64,000 nucleotides of DNA from Malacoraja senta (Eukaryota): positions 2,108,001 to 2,172,000 of the forward strand of contig CM075998.1 of assembly GCA_038087875.1 (NCBI GenBank). The letters are read 5' to 3'. Positions 8,161 to 40,064 of the stretch are shown here, one piece after another (the first letter of the stretch is position 1; each line of letters starts with the position of its first letter). Made by a program: the position numbers and the translations under genes. The notes beneath the pieces were generated by a model. That model was given only the letters and a program-made list of their open reading frames with translations, did no database searches and had not been told where the DNA came from.

Positions 8161-8892
8161 ACCATATTTTGCGTAGTGTGCTTTGAGCCAATAAAGGAAA
8201 TTCATGTTAGGAAATAGTTGCAATGCTCTGTTTGGACTCTCTGTGATAAAGTATGGTTTTCATTTTAAGACACAAACATGTACATTAAAGATTAGTTTCT
8301 CGTTTGTTATCATTTGGCACTGATGAAGTTTGTTTCCTTTGAATGATAAATATGCAAGTTCAATATCTCTGTTACCATATTGCAGCTGTCGGAAGAGATA
8401 GCATGTATTTCGATTAGAGACTCCTTCATAAACATAACATCATGATTTACTTTATCTATTAACAGTTAATGCCTTCACTTCTGCTTTATTTTCCCCACAT
8501 TCTTTTGGTAATGCTATTTTTTTTCTGATTGCTGGAACCGACCTTTATCAGTGAGGTCCAGGTCATGACTGTTGCGCAGAGTTAAGGAGAACTCTGCTGC
8601 CCCTGAAACTATCATGGGGACCCTGCAGCAAAATTGGGATCGCAACCTGCAGATTTTCTCTTAAATACGCTTTTCTTGTCTGTTGTAGTTGAGTGTTACA
8701 TCTCAAAAAATGTACAAAATACAAACGGATTCCCCAGGAATATAGAATATTCTTGCTTGGATACGCTCACTCTCTGAAACAACCTCTGTTTTGAAACCGA
8801 TGTTAAAGTTTACCTCTTTAAGGAAATGCTTTGCCTGTTATTCTTAATGTATGAGAGATTTGCTTCTATTATCAGTAATTAACTTGGGTGAT

Positions 8893-9505
8893 GCAAGATA
8901 CATTTATTTGTCACATGTGCCAGTTGGCACAGTGAAATGTGATCACCATACAGCCATACAATAAAAATAAAGAACACAACACACGATAGAGTTCAACATA
9001 AAACATCCCCACACAGCAGAATCAAAGTTTCCCACTGTGGGGGAAGGCACCAAAGTCAGTCCTCTTCCTCTAATGTTCCCCAATGTTCACCCGTGGTCGG
9101 GGCCTCCCCGAGCCCTCCGCAGTCGCAGCTACGGGCGGCCCGATGTTCAGGCACACTCGCCGGGGTGATGCAAGTCCGACGTCGGGGCTGGGGGACCTCC
9201 TCAGCGGCCTGGACATCAGAGTCGGCCACCTCTTACCGGAGTCCGCGACTCCCAAAGTCCGCAGGCCGCGCTGGGCGGAGATGCAACGCTGGCGGCCCTC
9301 GGCAAAGGGCCCCAGGACTCCGCGATGACGGTCAGCGCCGCCCGCGTTGGAAGCTCTCTCAAACTGCAGCTCCACGATGTTGGAGCAGCGGCCCAACGCT
9401 CTGGAGCTCCAAACGGCGATCCAGGTAGGCATCGCCCGCTCCGCGGTGAATCCTGCGCTGCGCCGCCGCTGTTGTAGTTCTGGTCCGGTGAGGTACTAAA
9501 CTAAG
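8893..9505 (-). mobile_element. Young GC/CpG-rich non-autonomous retroposon with Rex1-like 3' stem-loop tail
   Basis: The minus strand ends TCACTGTGCCA-AC-TGGCACATGTGA-caAATAAA. It shares CGCGGCCTGCGGACTTT and AACATCGTG(G/C)AGCTG with the element at 63441-64000. Confidence 0.65.
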
Positions 9506-9604
9506 GTGCAATCTGTTTACATAGGTGGATATTGCCACCCCCCCCCCCCCCCCGATGCCCAAGCCAATATTTATTCTACATCCATCATCCATAAAACATT
9601 TATT

Positions 9605-9860
9605 GATTTAATTCTCCAATCCATTCCCACTCTGAACTCTGTATCTTTGGTATCTTGCATCTTTCCAGTAAATCCCAATGTTATCTCAATCTTCTGTTAC
9701 AGCTTTTGGGATTTCATACCGTCTTCAACAATTTCAGATAACCAACCTTTCCAGTTTGTGTCACAACAGGCCAGTTCTGATGCAAGGTCAACAAATTTTT
9801 CTCAAATCATTGCCTAACCTGCTGTGTTTACAGCAAATGTTTTCATTTCAGATTGCCAGC
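9605..9860 (+). mobile_element. Penelope-like element 3' remnant (GIY-YIG C-terminus plus pLTR remnant)
   Basis: FNSPIHSHSELCIFGILH...FNNFR* parallels the better-preserved copies at 23345-24040 and 36755-37010. Confidence 0.55.
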
Positions 9861-10506
9861 AAAGTTTCGTATCTCAAGGTAGTTACTGTGCTACAGTTTC
9901 TGTATCTCTCTCTCCTCCAACCTCATTCATCTCCTTTTTACAGCACTTCCCAACAAGTCTTCGTTACCCTCTCAACCAGCTCCACCACATTTGTGTAGTT
10001 TTGTTTCCCTTTGTCTCCATTTTTTTCAGTATTTTGTTTTTATATCACTATAACAGACCAGTCTGATTGTCATCACGTTACTTTGTGAAATTTTGCTCTA
10101 TGCAAATTGCCAACAATGTCATATATCTTTTAACAGGAACTACATTCAAAATATTTCATTGGCTGCAAATATTTTCAGATATCCTGGTCTTGAAAAACAC
10201 AGTATTAATAACATGTTTTTCATCAAATAAATAGGTTAAGATGAAACATTAAATCGGCAGTCATGTCTCAACCCAACACTTCCATGCTCTGATCGTCGCA
10301 TAAAATCTCTCAGAAAAACTATAACCTATTGTAATCCCAAACCAATATCATTATCAAATGGTAAGGACAATCTATTGCAAGTGGTGAGTTACAGTAAACT
10401 AGGGTGGAAAAATGACACATCAACTCCACTACCATTTGCAGATTAAAGAGAAAATTTGGAGTGCAGATCTTTTATCAGGATAGTTTTAAGTTGTTTGATT
10501 CTTTAC

Positions 10507-10597
10507 TTGGTCTCAAGGATTGCTGTAGTGCCCTTCTGCACACCTTCTCGATCTTCGGGTGTTTTCTTGCTAAACAACACTGAACATTGTATTCAAA
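10507..10597 (-). CDS. Candidate internal exon of the unidentified minus-strand gene (FEYNVQCCLARKHPKIEKVCRRALQQSLRP)
   Basis: Pyrimidine tract plus cgcAG acceptor and CAA|GTAAAG donor. Phase 0 start is compatible with exon 11823-11888. No homology recognised. Confidence 0.25.
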
Positions 10598-10935
10598 CTG
10601 CGACCGGAACAGAGTTGCAAAGGAAAATAAAAAGTGAAGCTTGCTACCTATACGGATAGGGCTCATGCCTGTAACATGGTTTGTCACATCCATTAACATG
10701 GTTAGTGCATGCATCCATTTGGAAATTGGGCATGCTTCTCTGTCTGCCAGACTGGGGCTGAATCAAAGATCATCGAGCGGAGCTGAATAAGCAAGTTAGT
10801 GATGCCGAGAAGTGTGTTCAGCTCTGGCTGAACTACTTCTAATCTTGTGTGTGGACTCGATAAGAAGAAGCAGCAAGTTAGTATCCAGACATGATACTGC
10901 ACAACTGGGATTTATAGGTCGAGACATAAGAGAAT

Positions 10936-11071
10936 CTTCTTCTTTCGTGCGGCGTGCACAGCCTAAAGTTGTTGGACAACTTGTTCTATTTGATCTTCCG
11001 TTTGTGCACGTCAAGTTGATTGCATTAGTTGAAACAGAGCGGACCACGTGAAGGTTGCAATCTCCCACCCC
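10936..11071 (-). mobile_element. 136-bp ribozyme-capped short retroposon, copy 1
   Basis: 12-bp TSD ACATAAGAGAAT (10924-10935, 11072-11083), (GAA)n 3' tail, and the same 5' end as the copy at 31479-31623. Confidence 0.9.
11018..11071 (-). ncRNA. Minimal HDV-like (CPEB3-type) self-cleaving ribozyme motif
   Basis: GGGGUGG-GA-GAUUGCA-ACC-UUCACGU-GGU-CCGCUCU-GU-UUCAA-CUAA-UGCAAUC gives P1 7 bp, P2 7 bp, P3 3 bp, L3 and P1.1, and J4/2 with the catalytic C. Confidence 0.8.
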
Positions 11072-11822
11072 ACATAAGAGAATGAACATGCTGAAATCTC
11101 GAGCAAAAAAAAAAACAGCTACTGGAGGAACTCCACAGGTCAGGCAGCATCTAGAAATGGACAGTCGATGTTTTGGATCGGGACACTTTGTCTTGACCGG
11201 ATACTCGGCATCTTCACATTAGTGCATAAACTTAGGTCAAAGTGTTTCTTTACAAGGAGTGAAATAACACATGATTTTTTTTGTGCAGGTAGTTGAGGAT
11301 TGAAAGTGTATATCAAAGTACTTATTTTCTAACAAACTCATGTCAACCTTGGTTTTGCAATTATAACTTGGCTTCTCACTCTAAAATTTGTCAATTCAAG
11401 CCCTAAATCAAAGAATCGAGTACATGACCTAGTCTAACATTATAGTGCAGCATTGTCTGAGGTGCCACCCTTTGTGAGGTCCTGATCAGGTGGATATTAA
11501 ATATCCTCTGGCACCACTAGAAGAAGAAATAGGTGCTTCTCTCAGTGCCTTGGTGAATATTTGAACCTAAAGTGAAAAGTACAGATTACCTGTTTATTTG
11601 TCTAATTTGTCCTTTGTTCAGTACAAATTGCTTGACTGCTGAACACAAATTCATTCTCTGAAACCTGTTCTCAGTTACCCAGGCAGGTGCCATACAAAGA
11701 AGGCAAATCTGTCAAACATTTATTTTCAGATTCGTGGAATATTGAGGCTGTTACTTAGTATGAAAAAAAAAATCAGGAACAGATTGCTCGATGGTCAAAT
11801 ACTTTTACAGAGAGGTACTTAC

Positions 11823-11888
11823 CAATATTGCAACAATTGTGGAAAAGATCTTGGTGAAAATTCCTTTATTCATCTTAACACAATCAGG
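11823..11888 (-). CDS. Exon 2 of unidentified minus-strand transcript (PDCVKMNKGIFTKIFSTIVAIL)
   Basis: Strong acceptor cttttgtttcaacCAG and consensus donor TTG|GTAAGT; 66 nt. Only one frame is open and it is in frame with exon 14815-14892. Coding status unproven. Confidence 0.5.
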
Positions 11889-12385
11889 CTGGTTGAAACA
11901 AAAGGTTTATAGGACAACTCTATTGTTAAAATGTAGCCTAACTCCATCGCAGTGCTTTCACAATGGAACTGAATGTTGCTTGGTAGTTTTTTAACTCTTC
12001 TCGGACCACAAAATTTGCAGAAAATATGATTAAATCTTTTTTAACAAAGCACATTTTTTTAATGAGATAAAATGTAATGATGCTGGTATGGTCTTATTGA
12101 TCGAGCCCCATACCTCAAACGCTGAGTATGTTCCAAGATGGTTTGCAATCAATAAATTGCTTTCAAGTGCTCTCGTTAATTTGTGAAGAGCAAACAATAA
12201 ATGAACAAATATCTCTTTTTGATGTCTTAGTTAAAGGTGAACACTCTGTTCTACCCCAAATGATACAATGTGAGATCCTTCACTTTCAGCTGAACAGGTA
12301 AATAAACATTTGGCCCATCACAACAGCGTGGCATTTTGTCGACGATGCAAGGAACTGTGGATTATGTGCTGAAATTCTGGAACTT

Positions 12386-12730
12386 GAGTTTGTGTGCAGT
12401 TCTGATCGCTCCATTATAGGAAGGATGCGGAGGCTTTGGAGAGGGTGCAGATGACGTTTTCCCAGAATTAGAGGATTTCTGCTACAAGGAGTGGTTGGAT
12501 AAATTTAATTATATTCTCTGGAATGTTGGAGGCTGAAAGGAGACTTGATAGAAGTATATAAAATTATGAGGGGCATAGATGGGGTAGACAGTCTGTTTCT
12601 GGTAGATCGACTGATTTCAGTTGGGGTAGTACCTGGACATAAATCTCAGTGCTTCTGAACTGGTAGATGGGTAAGGTCTGCATGGACAATTGGGCAAAAG
12701 GGCTGTTTCCACGCTGTATGACTCTATGAT
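12386..12730 (+). mobile_element. CR1 LINE 3' fragment
   Basis: CVQF*SLHYRKDAEALERVQ...RLKGDLIEVYKIMRGID, then a HER1-like tail (gggcaaaagggctgtttccacgctgtatgactctatga). Confidence 0.85.
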
Positions 12731-13004
12731 CCTCTGTGAACTGATAATATTTGTAGGAAGTATGCTGCTTGAAGGTAAGACTGGCATAATTTGGACAGGT
12801 GAGGTACTGAAGCTGACCAGTGACTATACAACAATATTCCAGCATAAATCAAGAACCACAGGCAGAGTTGGAAAAGAGAAAATGAATTGAAAATTCTGTG
12901 TTTTATTAAGTAGCAATTGCTTGAAACCTGAACTGAAATCCCTGGCATTTGCCCGTTTGACTAAGCTAATACAAAAAAAGTTAATGATTGGCAATATTAA
13001 TCAG

Positions 13005-13565
13005 CTTTAGTTTAATTTGGTTTATTGTACGTGTACCAAGTTACAGTGAAAAGCTTTTAGTTGCGTGCTAACCAGTTATTGGAATGACTATAAATGATTA
13101 CACAATGTACAGATACATGACGAAGGGAATAACATTTAGTGCAAGGTAAATTCCGATTAAAGATAGTCCGAGGGTCTCCAATGAGGTACATAGTAGCTCA
13201 AGGCCAATCTCTAGTCATTGATAAGGATGGTTCAGTTGCCTGATAACAGGTGGGAAGGAACTATTTGTTCCTGAATCTGGAAGTGTTTTCAAACGTCTGT
13301 ACCACTTGCCTGATGGGAGAGGGGAGAAGACGATGTGACCGGATTGAGACTGGTCCTTGATTATGCTGGTGCCCTTGCTGAGGTAGCGTGAAGTGTAGAT
13401 GGAGACAATTGAAGGGAGGTTGGTTTGTGAGACGGTCTGAGCTGTGTCCACAATTCTCTGCAATTTCTTGCGGTCTTGGATGGAGTTGTTCCCATGCTGT
13501 GATGTATCCCGATAAAAAAAATTCTATGGCGCATCTATAAAAGTTGGTGAGAGTTGCTGGGGACT
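13005..13565 (-). mobile_element. Rex1/Babar LINE 3' end
   Basis: ORF-track peptide QRIVDTAQTVSQTNLPSIVSIYTSR..IIKD...FSPLPSGK..SSFPPVIRQLN, a 3' stem-loop plus caataaa, and a (taaac)n-like tail. Confidence 0.85.
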
Positions 13566-13599
13566 ATGAAAAAGAAAAGGACTATGCATAAAAACAAGA

Positions 13600-14110
13600 T
13601 ATGAGTACAAAATACTCAATGGTAGTGCAAGAGGTTGGCTGTAGTAATCCACTGAGGTCGGATTAGGGTTGTGCAAGTTGATTCAAGAACTCTATGGTTG
13701 TAGGAAAGTAGCTGTTCCTGAACCTGATGGTGTGCAACTTCAGGCTTCTGTCCTCCTGATGGTAGCAGTGAGAAGAGGGCATGGATGGTGGGGATCCCTG
13801 AAGATAGCCTGCCTCCTTGTAGATTCTTGGATGGTGGGGAGGGTTGTGCCTGTGATGGACCAGGTTGACTCTGTGGCATTTTACATTCTTGTGCGTTGGA
13901 ATAACTGTACCAGGTCATGATACAACCTGTCAGGATAATTTCTACATTGGATGTGTGGAGGTTTGTCAGAGCATTTGGTCACATGCTGAATCTCTTTAAA
14001 CTTTAAGAAAGTAGAGGTGTGCCATGCCTATTTTGTGATTACATATATGTATGTGCTAGGCCCAGTCCAGGACACGTCATTCGAGAAACCTAACACCTAG
14101 GAAATTGGAA
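13600..14110 (-). mobile_element. Second Rex1/Babar fragment
   Basis: HALFSLLPSG..RFRNSYFPTTI..LN-like motifs on the minus strand, frameshifted. Confidence 0.7.
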
Positions 14111-14814
14111 CGCTCCAATGGAGCCATCCAAACGCAGAACAACTGTCAAAGACCTTCTCGCTGTCAAAGTAAACTTTACTGAGGGTAAACTTCATTCTTC
14201 CTTGTTTTGAATACTTAAACAAACCACCGAAGGATGTGAACATTCCAAAACAAGTTGCTTGTCAAAAAAACACAACTAAAAAACAGTGTTTCTTTAATGC
14301 TGCAGACATAAGAAATTGTGCCTGAAAGCAGTTTTTTTTAAATGTCTCATTGAATTTATCTTAGGCTTTAATATTATAGTTTGAGTTGTAAATCGTTGGA
14401 AACGTCTACTGCAGTCATTGAGGCTGATAGACATTTGGACAATATGAGAATTAAAAGAATATGAGGATGAAGGAATACAGGGATGGGGCAAAACTAAACT
14501 GCAGATGCTGGATGCCTGAAATTAATTTAAAAAAACAGAAAATGCTGGGAACCCTCAGCAAGTCAGGTCATATCTGTGGAGTGAGGAAGTTAACGATTCG
14601 GGTCCGGGGCCCTTCATTGGAACAGGGCTGACAAAGGGGTCTCAGACCCAAAACATTCACTTTGTTTCTCTCATTGCACCTGCTGCCTGACCTGATGAGT
14701 AATGTATGTTTTGATAGATAGTGTTTGGACAGCGTGGATCAGCCATGATCTGGCTGACAGGAGAGCAGCCCTCAGGGCCGAATGGACTACTGCTGCTGCC
14801 ATTTATTGTGTTAC

Positions 14815-14892
14815 CTCAGTCACAAATACTTCAGTGTAAAAGCCCGCATCCGCCATCTCGCCGCGGGACCCTGTCGAGTTCACAGTTTCCAT
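14815..14892 (-). CDS. Putative first coding exon of unidentified gene head-to-head with SUOX (METVNSTGSRGEMADAGFYTEVFVTE)
   Basis: Lies in the CpG island. ATGs at 14892 and 14856 (gagATGGCGG, YY1-like). Donor GAG|GTAACA at 14814; phase 0 splices in frame to 11823-11888. Confidence 0.45.
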
Positions 14893-15200
14893 ATGTGCCC
14901 TGAGGCTTGGCGCGATGGAAGACGCTGCTCGCCACCGCCGCCACCGCCGCCATAAGAGCTCGTCACCCGCGGGAACGGCTCGCAGACCACGCTTGCGCAG
15001 AGCGCTCGAGTGAGCTGGTGATGGGAATGCGAAGTGAGGCGAAGAGAAAGAATTTTCCAGCCGGCGAAGATTTGGAGGAGAATTTCTGTCGGCGTTTTGA
15101 CTAAATGTGAGTGGAATGTCATTTAATGGCTTTGAGTGGATGGAGACCGAGGGCAGCGGAGTAACGCCTGATTTAAAACGGCGGGCGACGTGGTAATTAT
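14840..15200. promoter_or_regulatory. CpG-island promoter, probably bidirectional
   Basis: Non-repetitive CpG-dense patch in a CpG-poor background. YY1-like CCGCCAT at ~14850 and ~14947, NRF1-like GCTTGCGCAGAGCGC at 14991-15005, and outward-facing splice donors on both strands (14814 minus, 15107 plus). Confidence 0.75.
15000..15106 (+). other. SUOX: SUOX non-coding exon 1 (5' boundary approximate)
   Basis: Donor AAT|GTGAGT at 15107 at the edge of the CpG island nearest upstream of the SUOX ATG exon. Confidence 0.6.
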
Positions 15201-15908
15201 TGTATCGGCACCATAAACCGAACCCTCTTGAGATTAATATGTAAGACCTATGGGGGGGATGTTAACACCAAGGGCCGCTGCCCAGTCCGTCCTCCACACA
15301 CTTTGAGGGATATCTTCTCAACAATCACCGATTCGAACCTTTCAGTTACACGGTTAATCCTGTCGTCAGATGCCTTCCTGAGGGTTGAGAAAATGTGGAT
15401 AATTTCTGGGGGAGAAAAGTTTTTTTCTCGTCTTAATTGGTATTGGAAGGGAAAGAAAATATTGCTTGAATCCTCCACACTTTCTATTCCCCTATCCCAC
15501 CCCCAAAAAGTGACACATTCACTTAACACATAGCGGAAGCGGTCAGAGAATAGTTTCTATAACGCAAGGGGTCTCAAAGCATTTCGGAGTTGTGGAGTGT
15601 AATAATCACTGTTGGATTCGCCTTCAGAGCAAGTTCCCACAAACGCTGTCAGAAATGATGGCCAGCTAATCAGTTTTCAGTGTTATTTGTTATATTATGA
15701 ATAGATATTGACCTGGGCTGAATTATGAGATGTCTTCACACAAAGTACGGTGAATCTTTGGAATTCACTGGTTGCTTTTCTGCACTCCAGTGTTTCTCAC
15801 AAATTAATAGACAATCAAATAAATGTGATGGTGCAATAGAAATCTAAAATAGTTCCCCTTCTCGGGCATTTTTTTTTCAATCTTCTGCCTGTATTTTAAA
15901 AAAAAACA

Positions 15909-16088
15909 GAAGATAGACACAAAACGCTGGAGTAACTCAGCTGAACAGGCAACTTCTCTGGAGTCTTCTTCGGTCTCGAAATGTCACCAATTCCTTCACT
16001 CCAGAGACGCTGCCTGTCCCGCTGAGTTACTCCAGCATTTTGTGTCTATCTTCGGTTTAAATCAGCATCTGCAGTTCCTTGCTACACA
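15909..16088. mobile_element. Fold-back (inverted) Penelope-derived element
   Basis: Arms 15909-15964 and 15998-16053 are near-perfect reverse complements; same family as 6041-6135. Confidence 0.8.
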
Positions 16089-16149
16089 TTAAAAACAACA
16101 GGTTGTTCTTTTCAAGTTATTTTAATCAAGACAAGGTGAAGAAGGTAAA

Positions 16150-16860
16150 TGGATGAGCCTTAGTCTGTGTATCTGGTTCCTTTTGTGTGAACTTTGAGAT
16201 GTATCCAATAGATGAGAGGGAGCCATTGAATGTGGGGTATTTTGATTTATAAAAAGGCTTTTGATAAGAAGGATGTTGGTCAATGGGATTAGAACACATG
16301 GAATTGGAAGTTATAAACTAGCATGGAATTTGAGAGTTAACTAACAGACAAAATAAAGAGTACATACAAAAATAGCAAAGGTAGGATTAAATGGTTTTTC
16401 TCAAGTTGTGAATAGAGGAGGCCTCAAGCATTGATGCTTGAGGCCCCAACTATTCACAATTGCCAACATCAGAGTTGAGAGGTTCAAATTAAAGGTCAGG
16501 TTCTGTAGACAAAACTTATATTACTTTTATGACTGCAGAACATTTGAGGTCTAATCTAATCTGTGTATTTCAGATAACTAAAAGGGTTGATTAAGACTTT
16601 TTTAATTGCAGTGGAAGAATCAGGAACAAGATGGTGTAACCTTCTGAGTAGACCAACACCCTTCAGTAGGGATGTCACCACTTAAAGGATAGTGCAAATC
16701 TAAAACTTTCCCACCCCCACTTTAAACAAAACATGGGGTCAGCTGAAAATTTCTAATTTAATTATTCTCCTGCCACGTATTTTTCTGAGGCAAGGGCATT
16801 ATTACAGAACCGAGTTGCATAAATGTAATGACAATTAAGATCAACTGTGATTTTTGTTGG
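16150..16860 (+). mobile_element. Decayed CR1 RT and 3' fragments
   Basis: Remnants of the VY.D..KAFDK, HGIG....AW, LTDK.K and LGPQLFTI-like RT motifs. Confidence 0.6.
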
Positions 16861-24040: not shown

Positions 24041-24252
24041 AAAAAAACCACAGCCTGCACATCTTCTTTAAACTTGTATTAAATGGTTCCAAAATGGAAC
24101 CAATCAAAAAAGGAGCTGGCTGACTGCTCTCTTTTCTACATCTAAATGCTGTGAAACATTGCTCCAGTTGCCATACTAGGACAGAAGGTTGAGTTACATT
24201 ATCTTATCTCTTCATGAAAGATAAATTACTTTTCTTTTGTCTTTTGGTAAAG

Positions 24253-25695
24253 GAAGCGGAGCCAAAACCAGAAACATCGGTTGACAATGAGGCTCAACAA
24301 TCTTATCCTGTTTACACCAGGCAAGATGTGGCCAAGCATAAAACTATGGAAAGTGGAATATGGGTCACCTACAAATCTGACGTGTATGATATTACAAACT
24401 TTGTGGAACTGCATCCTGGGGGTGATAAGATATTGCTTGCTGCAGGAGGTGCCCTTGAACCATTTTGGTCAATGTATGCCGTCCATAAACAAGAACATGT
24501 TTACAAGATTCTTGAAGAGTACAAAGTAGGAGAATTGAGCCTAGAAGCTGCGCAGGAGGCCTCTGATGTGACTGACCCTTATGAGAAAGACCCATTGAGA
24601 CATCCGGTTTTGAAGGTGAATAGTTTAAAGCCATTTAATGCAGAAACGCCAGCAGAGATTCTAACTGAAAATTATCTTACCCCAAATGACTTGTTCTTCA
24701 TACGAAACCACCTGCCTGTCCCAGAAGTTGATCCAAAAAAATTCAGTTTGGAGATTAAGGGAGAGGGGCTGAAGTCCATCCAACTGTCCCTCCGTGACCT
24801 TCAAACCAAGTTCCCAAAGCACACAATAACTGCTACATTGCAATGTGCTGGCAATCGTCGCTCGGACATGAATGCAGTGCGTGAGGTGAAGGGACTAAAT
24901 TGGGGGTCAGCAGCGATTGGTAATGCAAAATGGACTGGGGTTAAACTCTCTGATGTCCTTGAGTATGCAAGGCTGCCAGCGAACACAGATGCTAAACATG
25001 TCCAATTTGAGGGACTTGATAAGGATACAAGTGGGACTCCCTACGGAGCCTCTATTCCTATTCGTAAGGCGCTTGCCAAAGATGGTGACGTGCTTCTTGC
25101 CTTTGAAATGAATGATGAAATTTTATCCAGAGATCATGGCTTTCCACTACGTCTCGTTGTCCCAGGAGTGGTAGGAGCACGTAATGTGAAGTGGTTGAGC
25201 AAGATCATCGTAAGTAAAGAAGAAAGCAAGAGCCATTGGCAAGTGAATGACTATAAGGGATTTTCTCCTTCTGTGGATTGGGATACCGTTGACTTCAACA
25301 CTGCTCCAGCAATCCAAGAACTATCTATCCAATCTGCCATCATGTCGCCTTCCAAAGATGAACGTCTCAGCTCGGACTTGGATGAGATGACAGTGAAAGG
25401 CTATGCGTGGAGTGGAGGTGGGCGAGAAGTGATCCGGGTGGATGTCTCAGTGGATGGTGGACAGACATGGCACGTGGCTGACTTAAGTGAGATGAAGCAA
25501 AATGAGGGGCAGGCCTGGGCCTGGAAACTGTGGCAACTCACTGTGCCTATGCCGAAGGACGAGGAAAGCCTGGAGATAATTTCCAAAGCTGTGGATAACC
25601 AGTACAATGTGCAGCCGGACACTGTTGCGCCCATTTGGAATTTACGAGGGGTCCTCAATAATTCTTGGAGTCGAGTGAACGTTACAATCAAATAG
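24253..25695 (+). CDS. SUOX: Sulfite oxidase coding exon 3 (cytochrome b5, Moco and dimerisation domains)
   Basis: HPGG heme motif, FFIRNH, LQCAGNRR (Mo-ligating Cys), DHGFPLR..PG..GARNVKWL, DYKGFSP and WNLRG. Acceptor ttttcttttgtcttttggtaAAG at 24252; stop TAG at 25693-25695. Confidence 0.98.
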   Translation, partial: EAEPKPETSVDNEAQQSYPVYTRQDVAKHKTMESGIWVTYKSDVYDITNFVELHPGGDKILLAAGGALEPFWSMYAVHKQEHVYKILEEYKVGELSLEAAQEASDVTDPYEKDPLRHPVLKVNSLKPFNAETPAEILTENYLTPNDLFFIRNHLPVPEVDPKKFSLEIKGEGLKSIQLSLRDLQTKFPKHTITATLQCAGNRRSDMNAVREVKGLNWGSAAIGNAKWTGVKLSDVLEYARLPANTDAKHVQFEGLDKDTSGTPYGASIPIRKALAKDGDVLLAFEMNDEILSRDHGFPLRLVVPGVVGARNVKWLSKIIVSKEESKSHWQVNDYKGFSPSVDWDTVDFNTAPAIQELSIQSAIMSPSKDERLSSDLDEMTVKGYAWSGGGREVIRVDVSVDGGQTWHVADLSEMKQNEGQAWAWKLWQLTVPMPKDEESLEIISKAVDNQYNVQPDTVAPIWNLRGVLNNSWSRVNVTIK

Positions 25696-25974: not shown

Positions 25975-26174
25975 NNNNNNNNNNNNNNNNNNNNNNNNNN
26001 NNNNNNNNNNNNNNNNNNNNNNNNNNNNNNNNNNNNNNNNNNNNNNNNNNNNNNNNNNNNNNNNNNNNNNNNNNNNNNNNNNNNNNNNNNNNNNNNNNNN
26101 NNNNNNNNNNNNNNNNNNNNNNNNNNNNNNNNNNNNNNNNNNNNNNNNNNNNNNNNNNNNNNNNNNNNNNNNNN
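25975..26174. other. Assembly gap (exactly 200 N)
   Basis: Run of N of round length, with different repeat families on the two sides. Confidence 0.99.
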
Positions 26175-28612: not shown

Positions 28613-31478
28613 ATATATTTTTTAAATTCTCAAATTATATTTTCTATGCAATTTCAAATTGAAAAATTCAACGCTCTGTACAATTTACACCATTAAAAGT
28701 ATGTCCCTCTTCCTGGTAACTCTTAACAGCATTTTTTCTATATGTGCTTTAGAAAAGCAATCTTAACAGTTGATGACTTGAGTCTACCTATTTAAATTAA
28801 AAGTTCTCTTTCTTTCCAATCTTTTTTTCCATCCAGCAAGGTCAATCCACAATTTCTAAAGCACACTTTTCGTAGGCAGTCATTCTTTGTGGTATAATGC
28901 ATATTCCATGTTGCATTAGATGGATATGCTATTTTCAGTCCTCCTTTTGTATGGGATTATCAGGGAGACAATGGATAAATGAAATCCTATCTCGATTGCA
29001 TCTATGAGCTGTTTCTTTCAGCAGCACGTGCATACCAGCCCATTTATTTTCTATTTTTCCCCAAGTTTGAGGAGAGGATGTTTAATTCTTACCCATGAGT
29101 GATATGAAACTGGCTGTACTTAAATAAGAAAGGAAGGTTTGCATGTGAAACTGGAAAAAATAATTGACTTTATCATCTTTAGGTTATTTAGGATGGGGGT
29201 TCCTTAAGGATGAAAATGTAAAGATACAATTACTTACATGTTATATTTATTTGCTTTTGGCCTTTTCTCCTCTGGTTATTTTGTTGGGATTCTTAAGTGT
29301 GCCAAATCCAGGCACTATTCACCTTTCCATAATTTTAATCGGGACTAACCTTGTACTTTATATTAAATATCACTGAATCTTGCAACCAAGTCAATAAGAT
29401 TGAAATTATGCAAATATTCATGTCAGGCCCCATTTGTGGCAAGAGAAGAGAAACTATTAAAGTTTCATTTTGATGACCTTTATCAGAATTGGAAGAGAAA
29501 ACAAGTTGTAAAATGGTCACGACCCTTCCCGAAATGTCACCCATTCCTTCTGTCCAGAGACGCTGCCTGTCATGCTGAATTACTCCAGCATTTTGTGTCT
29601 ACCTTTGGTGTAAACCAGCATCTGCAGTTCCTTCCTACACCTCACTGTCTACCTTTCTAATTGCTGGTTATGACCTACGCCGTAACGTTATTTCATTGAG
29701 CAAACTAATGTTTCTCACTGTTCCAAGAGGAAATTAATTTTCTGTTCCTACCATAATTAACACTAATTAAGATAGAATGCATTGATCCATTCAACACCTC
29801 AATGCTGAGAACAGATCGTTGATTGCATGGTTGTATTCTGTGGGCTGCAGATGCTTTTCACACAGAACATTGGCAATATTTCCTTTGCAGCTTGCTGCTG
29901 TCCTCATTTTAGATCAATGTTTTTTTTTAGAAAAGCTCATCATTCATTTTAAAAAGATGAAAGCAGCAATCTTTTTCTAAACGCAGACCTTTTTTTAACT
30001 TGTGCCTTGTGACAGCAGTCGACCATAAGGTTCACAGGAGGGATTTTACAGGTTCGTGATCTCATTACCGCAGGTTTATGGGGAAATAACGCTTGCGTTG
30101 TCCTATGATCTGGTGTCTATGATAAGATCACAGGTACGTATTTTACTATCATACTTAAGTTTCTCAGTTTTGGTTCTACATGGGTTTTTGATCAAGAAAG
30201 TGGACAAACATTTGCTGCCAGTTGTATGCCAATGCCCATACTCTGCCAGCAAATTTAAGTTGCCAATTGCGCACTTGCACTATAGTATGGAAATATCCAA
30301 CTTCCATTCAGTGACTCTCCTGTGACAGAAGTGCTGACCCCAGGAATTTAACAATGAAAATAAATTTTGGAAGCAGGCGTATATTGTACTTCTGTTGCTG
30401 CATAAATTATTCCCTGTGTCTCTGCAGCACTTTTTTTTTGCAAAATACAACGATCTCTTTTGTTTTTAGAAAAGCAACTTATGTAAGCGGGTAACCTCCA
30501 TCTTTGACATGGAGATTACAGAGAAATTTTACAAGGGCAAAGTACCGCAGATGCTGAAAGTCTGAAATGAAACCAGACAATGCAAGAAAGGCTCAGGAGA
30601 GCAAGTCAGAGAACAGAAGTGTAAATGGGTGGGTATGGTCATTGTAGACTTGGTGGGCTCAAAAGCTGGTTTCCATGCTATAACACTGACTCTGAGGAGA
30701 GACCTGTGATAGAGTTAATGTATGGGGAGATTGAAAGGGGTTGGCGATAGGAAAAAAAGCCTAAAGGAGCTGCAAATGCAGTATAATTATTTAGTCTATT
30801 ATGTGAAAAGCTTGATCTGCATGCTATTTTTTTTGCATTTGGAAGAATATTGTTATTCTTATTCCATTTCTGGATCGATTGTCATGCTTCAGTATTGAGA
30901 AGCTGGTCACAGTAGGCAAGTTGATTTCTGTTTTTTAAACTTATTAGAACACTGTGGTTGGATTTACACGTCTATTTTCTAATCTTGATCAGACTCTTCC
31001 TCTGTAAACCCCTTAATTAATGATTTCACTGGAAATATTGTGAATTGAAAAAGGTCAGACATGGAGTATACGATGCTGACATTTACTGTGCTAATTTATG
31101 TCTTCCTGTTTGCGTTTTGACTCTACAGAACTTAATCTGTTTACAGTAAAGTCAAATGCATGGTTTGCCTAAATATGAAGGGTATACACAGCCATTGGGG
31201 AAATCTATGGAAGCTTCATGAAGCTCAAGCTGAAAATTAACTCGTTTTACATGACATGGTGCACATTTTTGAGCAATATATTACCTTAGGATAGTAACTT
31301 GAGCTTAATTTAAATGGATGTCTATGATCCCATACTTAATCAGAGCTTCTAGATGAAACTTCACCCATTCTTTGTGTGTAAGTTTGGATGGTGAGTCCGG
31401 CCAAATATAATTTGGAGTGAGAAGCCAACCTGTTGCTCCCCGTCCAAGCACATTGACACTGAAGTTGATTGTAACACT

Positions 31479-31623
31479 CCTTCTTCTTCTTCTTGTGTAT
31501 GGCGTGCACAGCCTAAAGTTGTAGGACAACTTGTTCTATTTGATCTTATTTGATTGTGCACGCCGGGTTGATTGCATTCGTCGAAACAGGGCGGACCACG
31601 TGAAGGTTGCAATCTTCCACCCC
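31479..31623 (-). mobile_element. 145-bp ribozyme-capped short retroposon, copy 2
   Basis: 11-bp TSD ATTGTAACACT (31468-31478, 31624-31634), (GAA)n tail, identical 5' start to copy 1. Confidence 0.9.
31570..31623 (-). ncRNA. Minimal HDV-like (CPEB3-type) self-cleaving ribozyme motif
   Basis: GGGGUGG-AA-GAUUGCA-ACC-UUCACGU-GGU-CCGCCCU-GU-UUCGA-CGAA-UGCAAUC gives the complete nested pseudoknot pairing with G1.U wobble and catalytic C. Confidence 0.85.
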
Positions 31624-33629
31624 ATTGTAACACTTAGCTGAGGTGGACACAGAGATCTTGATCTTATTATACACCTGAGGCACTGTTTTAGGAGAAGGAA
31701 TGATTTTGCTATTAGCAAGCACATACATTGGAGTAATGACATATTGGAGATATGAAATTAATTGTGGTTCAAACCTGAGAAGTATGCATAAGGCCACTCA
31801 GCCACGCAATGTGGAGTTAGCGTTACAATCAAATTAACAGCGATCTTCTGCCATTCAATAAGATCATAGCTAATATCGACTCCACATTCCCTTCTGCCCA
31901 TAATCGCCTTTCACTCCTTGCTTATCTGCCTCAAATACATTCAAACACTTCTTCCACTGATCTTTTGAGGAAGAAAGTTTTGAGGGAAAGATTTTCACCT
32001 CATCTCAACTAAAATTGGCAACTCGTACTGTATATAGTAAATATTATTAAAAATGTTCTTCCTTAGCAATAAGTTAAACTGAGAAGCAAAGATGGACTAG
32101 GGTATACATTTCAGATGCTAATTAGCTAGATGTTTTATGAGCAGAGTAAACTGTTCCTTTGACATTAATTTTTGTCAATTTTGGCTTTTGGTATCTCCCA
32201 ACAGCTTGGTAGCAACCATTTGAGCCAATCTTTTATTGGCACTATAACACTGAGATATGGAACCCAATATAATGGAGTGCAGGAATGAAAGATTAGACCC
32301 AGGAACCACTGACAGTCTGGGTCCTTCATGCAGTCATTGGTGCCTAAGAACCACACTGGGAGAAATGCATTGTACTGTTTCCTATTGAACCACATAGAGC
32401 GACAATGACTCAATTTCTATTCCATGTCTGAGTGCAGTTTGCAGAGTGCCAATGTGGTGGCAGCTCTGCCTACGATAAACCTCGGCTGGAAAGGAAACAA
32501 TGTACAGGTTTTCTATTCCCAACTGCTATCCCAGCGACTTCTACAAGAATGATCAGGATAGGATTGGACATAGAGTTGTGACTCTTGAAAATAGACAATT
32601 TGCTCTTGGTTTCTGCTTGAATCGTGGCCATTCTGCTAAGGGACTTGTGGGACATTGGCTGTGACACAACTTGTATGTTACTGTTGGCAGGAGAGGAAAG
32701 GGGGAAAGTTGAGAAAAGTGGCCATGGAGCGACCTGGTTGATTGGTAAGATTTATGCCATTTCTATCCAGTAATATACGTTTACAAAAGAGAAATCAACT
32801 GGGAATGCGTTCATTGCAAAGATACATATTTGGGTATGTGTATTGTGAAACATAGATGAATGTTAACTAAACAGAAATAATTCTAGTATTTCTAAATGCA
32901 TGACAAAGCACATGGTACAATAATCATCTTGCTAAAGAAATATTTAAAAATTCATTTTCTAGTTTTGTTGTGGTGTCGTTTAAATGTCCAATCAATACCA
33001 GTCACAAGAATATCTAGAATTGTCCTTGTTCAACAGCCTTGAGACTAACCATTTGCATCAAACTTTGCCCCCCCCCCCCCTCCGCCCCCCGCTTTGAACA
33101 ATGTCTTCACTCTTTTCCACACTGTGACAAAGGTGGGGTTTGCAAACAGCCAGTGCTGCCACGTGCTTTTTGTTTAAAGGCCGATCATTTTGGAGAGAGT
33201 GAGTGCAGCTGAATACGGCTATTACAATGCTCACAGCTGCTGCTTTACAAATCATTTCTGAAAAGAGAACTTTTCAGTTTCTACATGTGCACCTAATTTT
33301 GAGCTGTTCTGTTTTCTGCTTGTTTTAATTTATTAAGCCTGCAGCTGTCACAGCTTTTGAGGAGTAGAAAATGGCTCTGCCACAACCATTTAAAGTAATT
33401 GGGTTGCTCTGAGGAGTCAAATTGGAAAGTCTGGTCCATTAAATCTTCTCAGGATATAATTTCCATTTATTCTTAGCTTTTTCAATACAAATGTAAGTAC
33501 TTCATTGCACACACTTTCCTATGAAAACATTCATTATAACAACAAATACAAAAGCAATATGTTACATAATTACAACTGATGCATTTGTGCGTTACAGTCA
33601 AATGTCAAGTCATTTCATCATTGATCATG

Positions 33630-38870: not shown

Positions 38871-40064
38871 ACAATGGGTTCATAATAAAAGGAATGTGTG
38901 TCTAATTTAGTTGAAAGTGTGGTTCTGTTGTGGTGGGATTATAGGTTTTGTAGCAAGCTAATTTCCCCCTTTCTCCCTCGAGGAATCCGATGATGGCCCA
39001 TAATGGCTCTGAGACCTGTAGCTATTGAGTGCTGCAGGTGTGTTGTCAGTCATGAAGATCTCCCTCAGAAGTTAAAATCAGCTGCAATGCACGGCGTTTT
39101 ATCCACGGCCATTATTCAAGATTGATATCAGATCCATTTGGAAAGATTATTTTGATGATTCACGTATGTATTGTATTTCTCCCCCGTTGCTCAGTTGTCC
39201 AGAGTGAGGCCTTTTGTGTAACAGCAAACCCTCGCCTGTTCGCAAAACAACCATTGTTGAACGGGATCAAAGTTTTACACGGTGAAGGTTCCGAAATCAA
39301 GATCTAAATACGGTATTGTTAAGAAGATCAACACATCTTTGGAAGTCTGATGTATTGATCACACAAATGTAATGGGTGAATTCACTTAGTCTAGAAGGCA
39401 TTTCCGAATAAATTGAGTGAAGGTGAAACTCGTATTGCAATTGAATGAAACAATAAAGTACTGTCCAAAATTTGTATGCGGTTTCAGTAATTGATTGCTA
39501 AAATATAGTGTTTAAACACAAATAATGGAATGTGGCATGTTAGCCCATTGATCATTATTTTAATTAAGTTTCAAGTTTAATTACTGTTATTTTTACAGGT
39601 AATAGTATAAGAGAACAAGAATAAGGATTAAAAGTTCTGTCCATTCTTATGATATTGACATCTAAATTATAGCAACTATCATTGGGTGCGTTTGCATTGA
39701 TATGTATCCACATCATAAGTGGCTTATATTTTGAAGTGTTTAGAAATTCTTTCTTTCACCACACATTATTTCAGTTGTGAGAATGAGATTTATTTATTTT
39801 AAAATTTTCTAAAAAATGTCCGTTACGTCTCTATCATTTCACATGTCTTAAGGCAGGTGCCAAAATTGCCTCCAGATTCTGCCAATGTCAATATATAACT
39901 TACTTAGGCGATGTGATAAAGACCTGAGTTTGATTTTACTTTTGTTAAGTTACTTTTCCACGTCTGTGTCTCCAGCCAATGCAATTCACCTTCAGTTACC
40001 TGACTTAGATCAGATATGACAAATGTCAGTGGTGAAAGTGGCACAACCAGCAAGTTTGCATACT

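What the first reader, a model, noticed from the sequence alone, without database searches (positions are those of the whole stretch)
10936..11071. Short retroposon whose 5' end is a minimal HDV-like ribozyme (ribozyme + stem-loop + (GAA)n)
Seen: two independent insertions (here and 31479-31623) with different TSDs both start at the same G of GGGGUGG. The first 54 nt fold into the HDV double pseudoknot: P1 GGGGUGG/CCGC(U/C)CU with G1.U, P2 GAUUGCA/UGCAAUC, P3 ACC/GGU, L3 UUCACGU, single C-G P1.1, and J4/2 C(U/G)AA. All four differences between the copies in this part are structure-neutral (J1/2, G-C to G.U, loop, variable J4/2 base). P4 is essentially absent. The rest is a 10-bp stem G(G/A)CGUGCACA/UGUGCACGCC enclosing the hairpin AAGUUGU-CC(U/A)-ACAACUU, then (GAA)n. 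Established: HDV-like ribozymes cleave 5' of G1 and define the 5' ends of R2, RTE and Ingi/L1Tc elements. Inference: a ~140-nt promoter-less SINE that cuts itself out of host read-through transcripts and is copied in trans by a LINE RT, possibly Ingi/Vingi or RTE clade. This is the best candidate here for an undescribed system.
Basis: partly seen in the sequence, partly recalled or inferred. Interest (0 to 1): 0.92.

Follow-up and report, generated by a model that had tools for sequence, protein, structure and literature searches.

The report
Ribozyme-headed mini retroposon, vertebrate genome
A 136-base jumping element, present in thousands of copies in this vertebrate and its relatives, starts exactly at the predicted cut site of a stripped-down hepatitis-delta-type self-cutting RNA, so it probably trims its own RNA out of longer transcripts instead of carrying a promoter; cutting itself has not been tested.

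Summary
Window 10936-11071 and 31479-31623 (both on the minus strand) are two insertions of one short retroposon. They have different target-site duplications of 12 and 11 bp, the same first base, and a (GAA)n tail.

- **Fold:** The first 54 nt form all 18 base pairs of an HDV-type double pseudoknot in both copies. The G1.U36 wobble, the L3 core and the catalytic C in a 4-nt J4/2 are present. There is no P4.
- **Chance:** A strict motif scan finds only these two sites in the window. Shuffled sequence gives 0.025 sites per window.
- **Family size and ends:** Public assemblies of four related organisms hold 8,600-16,800 contigs with the element. Similarity ends sharply at the first base.
- **Empty site:** Two of those assemblies carry the empty site of copy 1.
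- **Database support:** Rfam HDV models align end to end but score below threshold.
- **Not shown:** self-cleavage, and which LINE copies the element.

In kind it is a short internally deleted, ribozyme-headed non-LTR element, like R2 SIDEs and NARTc. It differs in being very small, dispersed, in a vertebrate, and in using a P4-less "minimal" HDV-like ribozyme. This scan has already noted and followed up the same family many times elsewhere in this genome.

The parts
10936..11071 (-). Copy 1 of the retroposon, 136 nt: ribozyme head, linker, 3' stem-loop domain and GAA-rich tail.
   Evidence: The boundaries agree with the sharp end of similarity seen in thousands of contigs.
10924..10935 (-). 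Target-site duplication of copy 1, 3' side (ATTCTCTTATGT on the element's strand).
   Evidence: Contigs of runs X21 and X23 join 10923 to 11072 with 12 shared letters, which is the empty site.
11072..11083 (-). Target-site duplication of copy 1, 5' side.
11018..11071 (-). 54-nt minimal HDV-like ribozyme fold of copy 1. P1 is 11065-11071 with 11036-11042. J1/2 is 11063-11064. P2 is 11056-11062 with 11018-11024. P3 is 11053-11055 with 11043-11045. L3 is 11046-11052. The P1.1 G is at 11035. A 6-nt loop at 11029-11034 stands in place of P4. J4/2 (CUAA) is 11025-11028, with the predicted catalytic C at 11028. The predicted cut is 5' of the G at 11071.
   Evidence: The Rfam HDV-F-prausnitzii model aligns end to end at 13.8 bits, below threshold.
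11013..11017 (-). Linker AACUU between the ribozyme and the 3' domain. It varies among copies.
10951..11012 (-). 3' domain. The outer stem GACGUGCACA (11003-11012) pairs with UGUGCACGCC (10951-10960), 9 of 10 pairs in copy 1. It encloses the hairpin AAGUUGU-CCA-ACAACUU (10966-10982). Presumed recognition module for the reverse transcriptase.
   Evidence: No variant reaches 3% in the inner stem, while its loop is hypervariable.
10936..10950 (-). 3' end GCACGAAAGAAGAAG, the GAA-repeat tail.
31479..31623 (-). Copy 2, 145 nt, of a subfamily with a 9-nt longer internal loop in the 3' domain and a full 10-bp outer stem. At the four sites where the family majority differs from copy 1, copy 2 carries the majority base.
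31570..31623 (-). Ribozyme fold of copy 2. P1 3' strand is CCGCCCU and J4/2 is CGAA, with the predicted catalytic C at 31580.
   Evidence: The Rfam HDV_ribozyme model aligns end to end at 21.3 bits, E 0.34.
31468..31478 (-). Target-site duplication of copy 2, 3' side (AGTGTTACAAT).
31624..31634 (-). Target-site duplication of copy 2, 5' side.

Best explanation
This is a non-autonomous non-LTR retroposon of about 135-145 nt with three modules: a 54-nt P4-less HDV-like self-cleaving ribozyme, a stem-loop domain, and a (GAA)n tail.

Proposed mechanism:
1. A copy is transcribed as part of a longer RNA.
2. The ribozyme folds and cuts immediately 5' of G1. This gives the element RNA its exact first base.
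3. A LINE reverse transcriptase that recognises the 3' stem-loop and tail copies the RNA into AT-rich DNA by target-primed reverse transcription. This leaves 8-12 bp target-site duplications.

What is shown: the architecture, the retroposon nature, the precise shared 5' end, the abundance, and a recent insertion.

What is inferred: the cleavage itself, the dependence on read-through transcription, and the trans-acting LINE.
For: - **Two independent insertions.** They have different TSDs and the same first base.
- **Empty site.** The empty site of copy 1 appears in runs X21 and X23: the contigs skip 148 nt, which is 136 plus the 12-bp TSD.
- **Abundance.** 8,614-16,841 DNA contigs per run carry the element in four coded organisms.
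- **Sharp 5' end.** Summed depth falls about 500-fold across 11068-11083. The best-supported ends of similarity on the 5' side are at 11071/11072 in every run. The flanks there are unrelated and AT-rich (agreement 0.33-0.35). There is no 5' truncation gradient.
- **Complete fold.** The HDV descriptor is matched exactly from nt 1. Chance gives 0.025 sites per window, and catalytic-C control motifs give none. All 18 pairs are standard in both copies.
- **Rfam.** The HDV models align globally from G1 to the end of P2 with only P4 skipped.
- **Match to the CPEB3 core.** G1.U36, U20/G25, C22-G37 plus U21/U38, and a 4-nt J4/2 beginning with C match the CPEB3 core as described in PMC4836649.
- **Match to an active minimal ribozyme.** The module order and lengths match drz-Mtgn-1, whose class self-cleaves in vitro (PMC10879173).
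- **Conserved core across copies.** No variant reaches 3% at the catalytic C, G37, C22, U20, A46, A47, either strand of P2, or the 5' strand of P1. The four variable sites in the 3' strand of P1 all keep pairing.
- **No Pol III head.** There is no tRNA gene in or beside copy 1 and no Rfam family at gathering score anywhere in the window.
Against: - There are no cleavage data.
- Rfam scores are far below the gathering thresholds (21.3 against 50 bits, and 13.8/14.4 against 44).
- The within-family variant pattern is not statistically decisive. About 59% of all possible transitions in the head would be structure-compatible anyway, by my hand count. With a GGGGUGG 5' strand, every transition in the 3' strand of P1 keeps pairing.
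- G25>A, which should kill the ribozyme, is seen at 5-8% of depth.
- Contigs from libraries guessed to be RNA bridge the cut site with long flanks, so uncut molecules or DNA carry-over exist.
- No LINE sharing either end was found in this window.
Confidence: 0.78

Rival explanations
1. The element is an ordinary small retroposon whose defined 5' end comes from transcription initiation or some other processing. The HDV-like fold is then a coincidence, or a dead relic inherited from a LINE 5' end.
For: - No cleavage has been shown.
- Rfam hits are below threshold.
- Variant statistics within the family do not prove selection on the fold.
- Contigs from libraries guessed to be RNA bridge the cut site.
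Against: - The full descriptor occurs about 2 in 10 million positions by chance (0.025 per 128,000 positions scanned), yet it starts exactly at the independently defined first base.
- There is no tRNA gene in or beside copy 1 and no Rfam family at gathering score anywhere in the window.
- All catalytic-core positions stay invariant at the 3% level across thousands of copies in four organisms.
Confidence: 0.12
2. The ribozyme is active, but the element's main life cycle is not LINE-dependent retroposition of a linear RNA. One alternative is a retrozyme-like circular RNA made from tandem copies. Another is a host-adopted RNA-processing module.
For: A few contigs show head-to-tail or 'goes back' joints between copies.
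Against: - Those joints are rare, single contigs with low depth.
- The copies in the window are solitary and have TSDs and simple-repeat tails, which are the signature of target-primed reverse transcription.
- There is only one ribozyme per unit, and nothing suggests ligation.
Confidence: 0.04
3. The element is only a collection of dead deletion derivatives of one LINE, with no propagation of its own as a short element.
For: Internal deletion is the known origin of R2 SIDEs and NARTc (PMC3414825, PMC4035085).
Against: - Thousands of contigs share the same internal structure and the same two ends.
- The copies fall into subfamilies (copy 1 type and copy 2 type).
- A lineage-specific empty site exists.
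- Together these mean the short form itself was copied many times.
Confidence: 0.04

Closest known systems
R2 SIDEs and R2/R1 hybrid SIDEs of Drosophila (PMC3414825)
   Same: - Non-autonomous non-LTR elements made of a 5' HDV-like ribozyme joined to a LINE 3' end.
- The 5' end is defined by self-cleavage of a co-transcript.
- They are copied in trans by target-primed reverse transcription.
   Different: - SIDEs are rare, site-specific in rDNA, and carry a full-size R2 ribozyme.
- This family is dispersed in AT-rich DNA and very abundant.
- It is only about 140 nt long, sits in a vertebrate, and uses a P4-less ribozyme.
- Its LINE partner is not identified.
NARTc / RIME / SIDER elements of trypanosomatids with the Pr77 HDV-like ribozyme (PMC3185411, PMC4035085)
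   Same: - Short, dispersed, non-autonomous relatives of a LINE.
- Their first nucleotides form an HDV-like ribozyme that cuts at +1.
   Different: - Pr77 is also an internal promoter, is 77 nt long and has a P4.
- The hosts are protists.
- Here nothing suggests a promoter, and P4 is missing.
Minimal HDV-like ribozymes (drz-Mtgn) and theta ribozymes of gut phages (PMC10879173)
   Same: - Same module order and sizes as drz-Mtgn-1, as given in that paper: short J1/2, 3-bp P3, 7-nt L3 of the form UUCNCGU, a single G for P1.1, a 6-7 nt loop in place of P4, and J4/2 CUAA.
- About 50-56 nt in total.
   Different: - Those are reported almost only from Caudoviricetes phages and are often fused to tRNA 3' ends.
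- This one heads a vertebrate retroposon, and no tRNA is nearby.
- The helices share no sequence.
- The refined theta descriptor is given only in a figure and could not be applied.
Mammalian CPEB3 ribozyme
   Same: - Collinear without gaps over nt 1-38.
- G1.U36 wobble.
- L3 UUCACGU is identical to the mouse sequence implied by the primer GTTCACGTCGCGGCC in PMC10919898.
- U20/G25, and a P1.1 made of one C-G plus U/U.
- A 4-nt J4/2 that starts with the catalytic C (PMC4836649).
   Different: - CPEB3 has a P4 hairpin, different P1, P2 and P3 sequences, and is a single intronic locus in mammals.
- The Rfam CPEB3 model gave no match at E up to 10.
- The shared positions are the ones constrained in all HDV-like ribozymes. 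The bacterial F. prausnitzii model matches the same P3-L3 core. Common descent is therefore not shown.
HDV-like ribozymes at the 5' ends of RTE, R2 and L1Tc LINEs (Ruminski et al. 2011, cited in PMC10879173; paper not held)
   Same: Same proposed role: 5' processing of a retrotransposon RNA out of a co-transcript.
   Different: Those are full-length autonomous LINEs with larger ribozymes. Here the element has no coding capacity.

Membership tests
HDV-like ribozyme fold (drz) | Nested double pseudoknot: P1 (7 bp), P2, P3 (3 bp) and P1.1 in the canonical order. | tested here: met
   Descriptor scan. All 18 pairs are standard in both copies, against 25-44% when the partners are slid.
HDV-like ribozyme fold (drz) | G1.U wobble closing P1 at the cleavage site. 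| tested here: met
   G1.U36 in both copies. U36>C reaches at most 3% in one of four runs.
HDV-like ribozyme fold (drz) | Catalytic cytosine as the first base of J4/2 (C-N-R-A). | tested here: met
   CUAA in copy 1 and CGAA in copy 2. Control motifs with A, G or U there give 0 sites. No variant reaches 3% at this C in four runs.
HDV-like ribozyme fold (drz) | L3 core: U20 and G25 (metal-binding reverse wobble) and C22 for P1.1. | tested here: met
   L3 is UUCACGU at nt 20-26. The roles of these bases are as described for CPEB3/HDV in PMC4836649. G25>A is seen at 5-8% of depth.
HDV-like ribozyme fold (drz) | Reaches the curated Rfam score of an HDV-type family. | tested here: not met
   No match at gathering score. 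In E-value mode: RF00094 at 21.3 of 50 bits, RF02682 at 13.8/14.4 of 44 bits. The alignments are global with P4 skipped. Rfam models do not score the pseudoknots.
HDV-like ribozyme fold (drz) | Mg2+-dependent self-scission 5' of G1 that is lost in the C-to-U mutant. | not testable with these tools
   This needs in vitro transcription assays.
Minimal (P4-less) HDV-like ribozymes / theta ribozymes | P4 replaced by a short loop; total length about 50-56 nt. | tested here: met
   6 nt lie between G37 and C44, and the total is 54 nt. Compared by eye with the drz-Mtgn-1 sequence printed in PMC10879173.
Minimal (P4-less) HDV-like ribozymes / theta ribozymes | Theta context: cleavage site next to a tRNA 3' end, in a phage genome. 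| tested here: not met
   No tRNA in 10800-11200. The host is a vertebrate: the SUOX ORF scores 653 bits to chicken 1SOX. The 28-mer head pattern is absent from viral contigs.
Minimal (P4-less) HDV-like ribozymes / theta ribozymes | Fits the refined theta descriptor. | not testable with these tools
   The descriptor is given only in a figure of PMC10879173.
CPEB3 ribozyme family (Rfam RF00622) | Matches the family covariance model. | tested here: not met
   Not among the matches at E up to 10 for either copy.
CPEB3 ribozyme family (Rfam RF00622) | P4 hairpin present. | tested here: not met
   There is only a 6-nt loop.
Ribozyme-headed non-autonomous non-LTR element (SIDE type) | Insertions flanked by target-site duplications, with a 3' simple-repeat tail and no coding capacity. 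| tested here: met
   TSDs of 12 and 11 bp, a GAA tail, and 136/145 nt. An empty site is seen in two runs.
Ribozyme-headed non-autonomous non-LTR element (SIDE type) | The 5' end of copies coincides with the ribozyme cleavage site across the family. | tested here: met
   Similarity ends at 11071/11072 in hundreds of contigs per run, and depth drops about 500-fold.
Ribozyme-headed non-autonomous non-LTR element (SIDE type) | Shares its 5' and 3' ends with an autonomous LINE of the same genome. | not testable with these tools
   No related LINE lies in the window, and the rest of the genome is not readable here. Earlier first-reader notes propose Vingi/Ingi-like or RTE partners; these are unverified.
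Classical SINE (Pol III head from tRNA, 7SL or 5S) | The 5' part derives from a Pol III-transcribed RNA with an internal promoter. | tested here: not met
   No Rfam family matches at gathering score and ARAGORN finds no tRNA.

The most novel reading that the evidence does not exclude
This retroposon lineage, or its LINE partner, may represent the ancestral vertebrate stock from which the mammalian CPEB3 ribozyme was adopted. The two are collinear over nt 1-38 and identical at L3, P1.1 and J4/2. If so, P4-less 'minimal' HDV-like ribozymes, so far reported almost only from gut phages, would be a native and highly amplified component of vertebrate genomes.
Probability: 0.12. Interest if true: 0.85.

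Novelty: new variant of a known kind. Interest (0 to 1): 0.6.

Why it matters
If the head cleaves, this would be one of the smallest self-processing mobile elements known.
- It would put a minimal HDV-like ribozyme into a vertebrate retroposon with thousands of copies. The main survey of that ribozyme class placed about 99% of its members in phages and left their origin open (PMC10879173).
- It gives thousands of natural sequence variants of a 54-nt ribozyme for structure-function work.
- It predicts an orientation bias of copies inside genes, because sense copies would cut host pre-mRNAs.
- It offers a concrete, though unproven, lead on where CPEB3-type ribozymes came from.

Tried and rejected
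- **Rfam at gathering score:** no hit anywhere in the window. In E-value mode the whole window shows no other ribozyme candidate.
- **Public collections:** exact and degenerate head patterns found nothing in metagenome contigs or viral contigs.
- **5'-end mapping in RNA:** not possible. All runs offered are kept as assembled contigs, which break at repeat borders anyway. Contigs that end at G1 are therefore not evidence of cleavage.
- **Selection test on within-family variants:** not significant. I do not claim covariation. Two copies give no compensatory change.
- **LINE partner:** a blastn of the element against the window found only the two copies. No other GAA-tailed element is present.
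- **Minimum-free-energy z-scores:** not significant. This is expected because pseudoknots are not modelled.
- **ESM Atlas search with the SUOX ORF:** gave no usable taxon.
- **Literature:** searches for a prior description found nothing in the held library (HDV-like with SINE, skate, shark or cartilaginous fish). Repbase and Dfam cannot be searched here. The key papers of Ruminski 2011 and Webb and Luptak 2011 are not held.

Full report
**What is there.** The element lies on the minus strand.
- Copy 1 occupies 10936-11071. It is flanked on both sides by ATTCTCTTATGT (10924-10935 and 11072-11083).
- Copy 2 occupies 31479-31623. It is flanked by AGTGTTACAAT (31468-31478 and 31624-31634).
- The two copies are 88% identical over 139 aligned bases. 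They start at the same G and end in GAA repeats.
- A 24-mer from the head and a 36-mer from the 3' domain each occur only at these two places. None is expected by chance.
- A sensitive blastn of the element against the window finds nothing else related. No other (GAA)n-tailed element is present.

**The head.** The first 54 nt have these modules, in order:

| Module | Positions | Sequence |
|---|---|---|
| P1, 5' strand | nt 1-7 | GGGGUGG |
| J1/2 | nt 8-9 | 2 nt |
| P2, 5' strand | nt 10-16 | GAUUGCA |
| P3, 5' strand | nt 17-19 | ACC |
| L3 | nt 20-26 | UUCACGU |
| P3, 3' strand | nt 27-29 | GGU |
| P1, 3' strand | nt 30-36 | CCGC(U/C)CU |
| P1.1 partner | nt 37 | G |
| Loop in place of P4 | nt 38-43 | 6 nt |
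| J4/2 | nt 44-47 | C(U/G)AA |
| P2, 3' strand | nt 48-54 | UGCAAUC |

- All 18 pairs (7 + 7 + 3 + 1) are standard pairs in both copies. With the partners slid by 1-3 columns only 25-44% pair.
- I wrote a strict descriptor with these requirements: G1; a 7-bp P1 closed by G.U; a P2 of 5-8 bp; a 3-bp P3; an L3 of 7-8 nt containing a C; a G after P1; and C-N-R-A before the P2 3' strand.
- It hits only these two sites on both strands of the window.
- Forty dinucleotide-preserving shuffles gave one hit in total, which is 0.025 per window or about 2 in 10 million positions.
- Following the control idea of PMC10879173, I replaced the catalytic C by A, G or U. This gave no site. A relaxed descriptor (one P1 mismatch, P4 up to 100 nt) still finds only the two copies.
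- The point that matters is the coincidence. A motif this rare starts exactly at the base that the target-site duplications independently define as the element's first base.

**Database view of the head.**
- At Rfam gathering thresholds nothing in the window matches.
- With permissive thresholds, copy 2 aligns end to end to HDV_ribozyme (RF00094, model 1-89 of 89, 21.3 bits, E 0.34).
- Both copies align end to end to HDV-F-prausnitzii (RF02682, 13.8 and 14.4 bits). These alignments run from G1 to the end of P2 and skip only P4.
- These scores are far below the curated cut-offs (50 and 44 bits), so this is supporting evidence and not proof. The models do not score the pseudoknots, and they penalise the missing P4.
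- The CPEB3 model was not among the matches at E up to 10.

**The family beyond this window.**
- *RNA-labelled libraries.* Contigs of four libraries guessed to be RNA, from several coded organisms, were laid on 10800-11200. Between 111 and 1,014 contigs per run were laid there, most of their depth on the element. Similarity ends at 10935/10936 and at 11071/11072, and the flanks beyond are unrelated.
- *DNA assemblies.* Four assemblies (coded organisms E, F, H, G) hold 8,614-16,841 contigs with the element.
  - Summed depth falls about 500-fold between 11068-11075 and 11076-11083.
  - In every run the best-supported ends of similarity on the 5' side are at 11071 and 11072. There are 84-263 contigs at each, with AT-rich flanks agreeing at only 0.33-0.35.
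  - The head is as deep as the tail, so there is no 5' truncation gradient.
- *Empty site.* In runs X21 and X23 one contig each joins 10923 directly to 11072 with 12 ambiguous letters. That is the empty site lacking the 136-nt element and one copy of the 12-bp duplication. Copy 1 is therefore a lineage-specific or polymorphic insertion. The contigs are single and the shorter side is only 24 nt.

**Variation among copies.** I mapped all variants that reach 3% of depth in any DNA run onto the RNA.

In the head:
- G25>A (L3, a CpG site) at 5-8%.
- U29>C, which breaks a P3 pair, at 4% in one run only.
- C31>U, G32>A, U34/C34 and U36>C. All four are in the 3' strand of P1 and all keep pairing.
- C41>U and A42/G42, in the loop in place of P4.
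- U45>G/A, the free N of J4/2.

Nothing reaches 3% at these positions:
- the 5' strand of P1,
- either strand of P2,
- the 5' strand of P3,
- U20-C24,
- G37,
- the catalytic C44,
- A46 or A47.

This is what an active ribozyme predicts, but I do not regard it as proof.
- By my hand count about 59% of all possible transitions in the head would be structure-compatible.
- With a GGGGUGG 5' strand, every transition in the opposite strand keeps pairing.
- The density of variable sites in the head (9 of 54) is no lower than in the rest of the element (12 of 82).
- No compensatory double change can be read from two copies. The read tool gives no linkage between sites.
- One oddity is unexplained. G25>A is commoner than the mirror CpG change C24>U, although G25 should be essential (PMC4836649).

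**The 3' part.**
- After a 5-nt variable linker comes an outer stem, G(A/G)CGUGCACA with UGUGCACGCC. It has 9 of 10 pairs in copy 1 and 10 of 10 in copy 2.
- The stem encloses a 7-bp hairpin, AAGUUGU-CCN-ACAACUU. Then come a few bases and the GAA repeats.
- Among copies the inner stem shows no variant at 3%, while its loop (nt 96-100) is hypervariable.
- A conserved 3' stem-loop followed by a short-repeat tail is the arrangement used by LINE/SINE pairs whose reverse transcriptase recognises a specific 3' end. This is established knowledge, for example the R2 3' UTR requirement restated in PMC3414825.
- Which LINE is involved could not be tested. None that shares these ends is in the window.
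- Earlier first-reader notes of this scan propose a Vingi/Ingi-like or an RTE partner, without verification.
- The only literature lead is that the fish RTE-like element Rex3 ends in (GAA)2(GATG)n (PMC6274825).

**What it is not.**
- No tRNA gene is found in or beside copy 1, and no Rfam family reaches its gathering score anywhere in the window. It is therefore not a classical Pol III SINE.
- It has no terminal inverted repeats and its duplications vary in length, so it is not a DNA transposon.
- Tandem or 'goes back' joints exist only as rare single contigs. A circular-RNA life cycle is therefore unlikely.

**Host.** The window carries a 493-codon ORF with Cyt-b5, molybdopterin-binding and Mo-co dimerisation domains. 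It scores 653 bits against chicken sulfite oxidase 1SOX, against 350 bits for the plant enzyme. The genome is therefore a vertebrate. Earlier follow-up notes call it a skate. I did not verify the species, because organism names are coded in the run tools.

**Comparison with what is known.**
- *The kind is known.* R2 SIDEs and R2/R1 hybrids in Drosophila are a 5' HDV-like ribozyme joined to a LINE 3' end (PMC3414825). NARTc, RIME and SIDER elements of trypanosomatids begin with the Pr77 HDV-like ribozyme, and several of them cleave in vitro (PMC3185411, PMC4035085).
- *The ribozyme subclass is known.* P4-less minimal HDV-like ribozymes were found in metagenomes, and the related theta ribozymes of gut phages self-cleave in vitro. 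About 99% of them were placed in Caudoviricetes, and their origin was called open (PMC10879173).
- *Match to drz-Mtgn-1.* The sequence printed in that paper has the same layout as this head: 6-bp P1, 2-nt J1/2, 6-bp P2, 3-bp P3, L3 UUCCCGU, a single G, a 7-nt loop, and J4/2 CUAA.
- *Match to CPEB3.* The resemblance is real at the core: G1.U36, U20/G25, C22, a P1.1 of one C-G plus U/U, a 4-nt J4/2, and L3 identical to the mouse sequence (PMC4836649, PMC10919898). These are the positions constrained in every HDV-like ribozyme. The helices differ, P4 is absent, and the Rfam CPEB3 model does not match. Homology remains a lead only.

**Prior description.** I found none of this element in the held literature. 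Repbase and Dfam cannot be queried here.

**Earlier work in this scan.** The scan has noted this same family many times elsewhere in this genome, and at least eight follow-ups reached similar conclusions. My conclusions rest on the tests above and not on those notes.

**Verdict.**
- This is a real and well-bounded feature.
- It is a new variant of a known kind: a ribozyme-headed, internally deleted non-LTR element that is unusually small, very abundant, vertebrate, and built on a minimal HDV-like ribozyme.
- I put the whole mechanism at about 0.78.
- The retroposon nature and the precise 5' end are close to certain.
- Cleavage, read-through dependence and the LINE partner are inferred.

Noticed in passing
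window 24214-25695 (+): Uninterrupted 493-codon ORF for sulfite oxidase (Cyt-b5, Oxidored_molyb and Mo-co_dimer domains). It scores 653 bits to chicken SUOX 1SOX, which marks the genome as vertebrate.
   Followed up: partly
window 39113-39355 (+): Sub-threshold Rfam match to the H/ACA-box small RNA U85 (RF01296): 24.6 bits against a gathering score of 41, E 0.014, full model length. Possibly a diverged scaRNA gene.
   Followed up: no
window 10800-10870 and 11122-11163: Two other very abundant repeat families flank copy 1. Their summed contig depth in libraries guessed to be RNA reaches the thousands to tens of thousands, while the unique DNA between them has none.
   Followed up: no
run X29, letters between a joint at 11071/10935 (table 5c): A contig carries the head of a related second family. 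Read on the RNA strand it begins GGGGUGGGAGAUCGCAGCCUUCAUGUG. Compared with this family, P2 has U13>C, P3 has A17>G and L3 has C24>U. The 3' half was not visible, so compensation could not be checked.
   Followed up: partly
window 31565-31622 (-), copy 2: In the minimum-free-energy fold, G2-G5 pair with the CCC(G) of the linker (nt 56-59) instead of forming P1. This could be a competing helix that modulates cleavage, as described for the region downstream of Pr77 in L1Tc (PMC4035085).
   Followed up: no
window 11047-11048: At the CpG in L3, G25>A is seen at 5-8% of depth in four DNA runs, while the mirror change C24>U stays under 3%. This is unexplained.
   Followed up: partly
window 25975-26174: A run of 200 N (assembly gap or masked stretch) lies just downstream of the SUOX ORF. 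It was left as it is.
   Followed up: no
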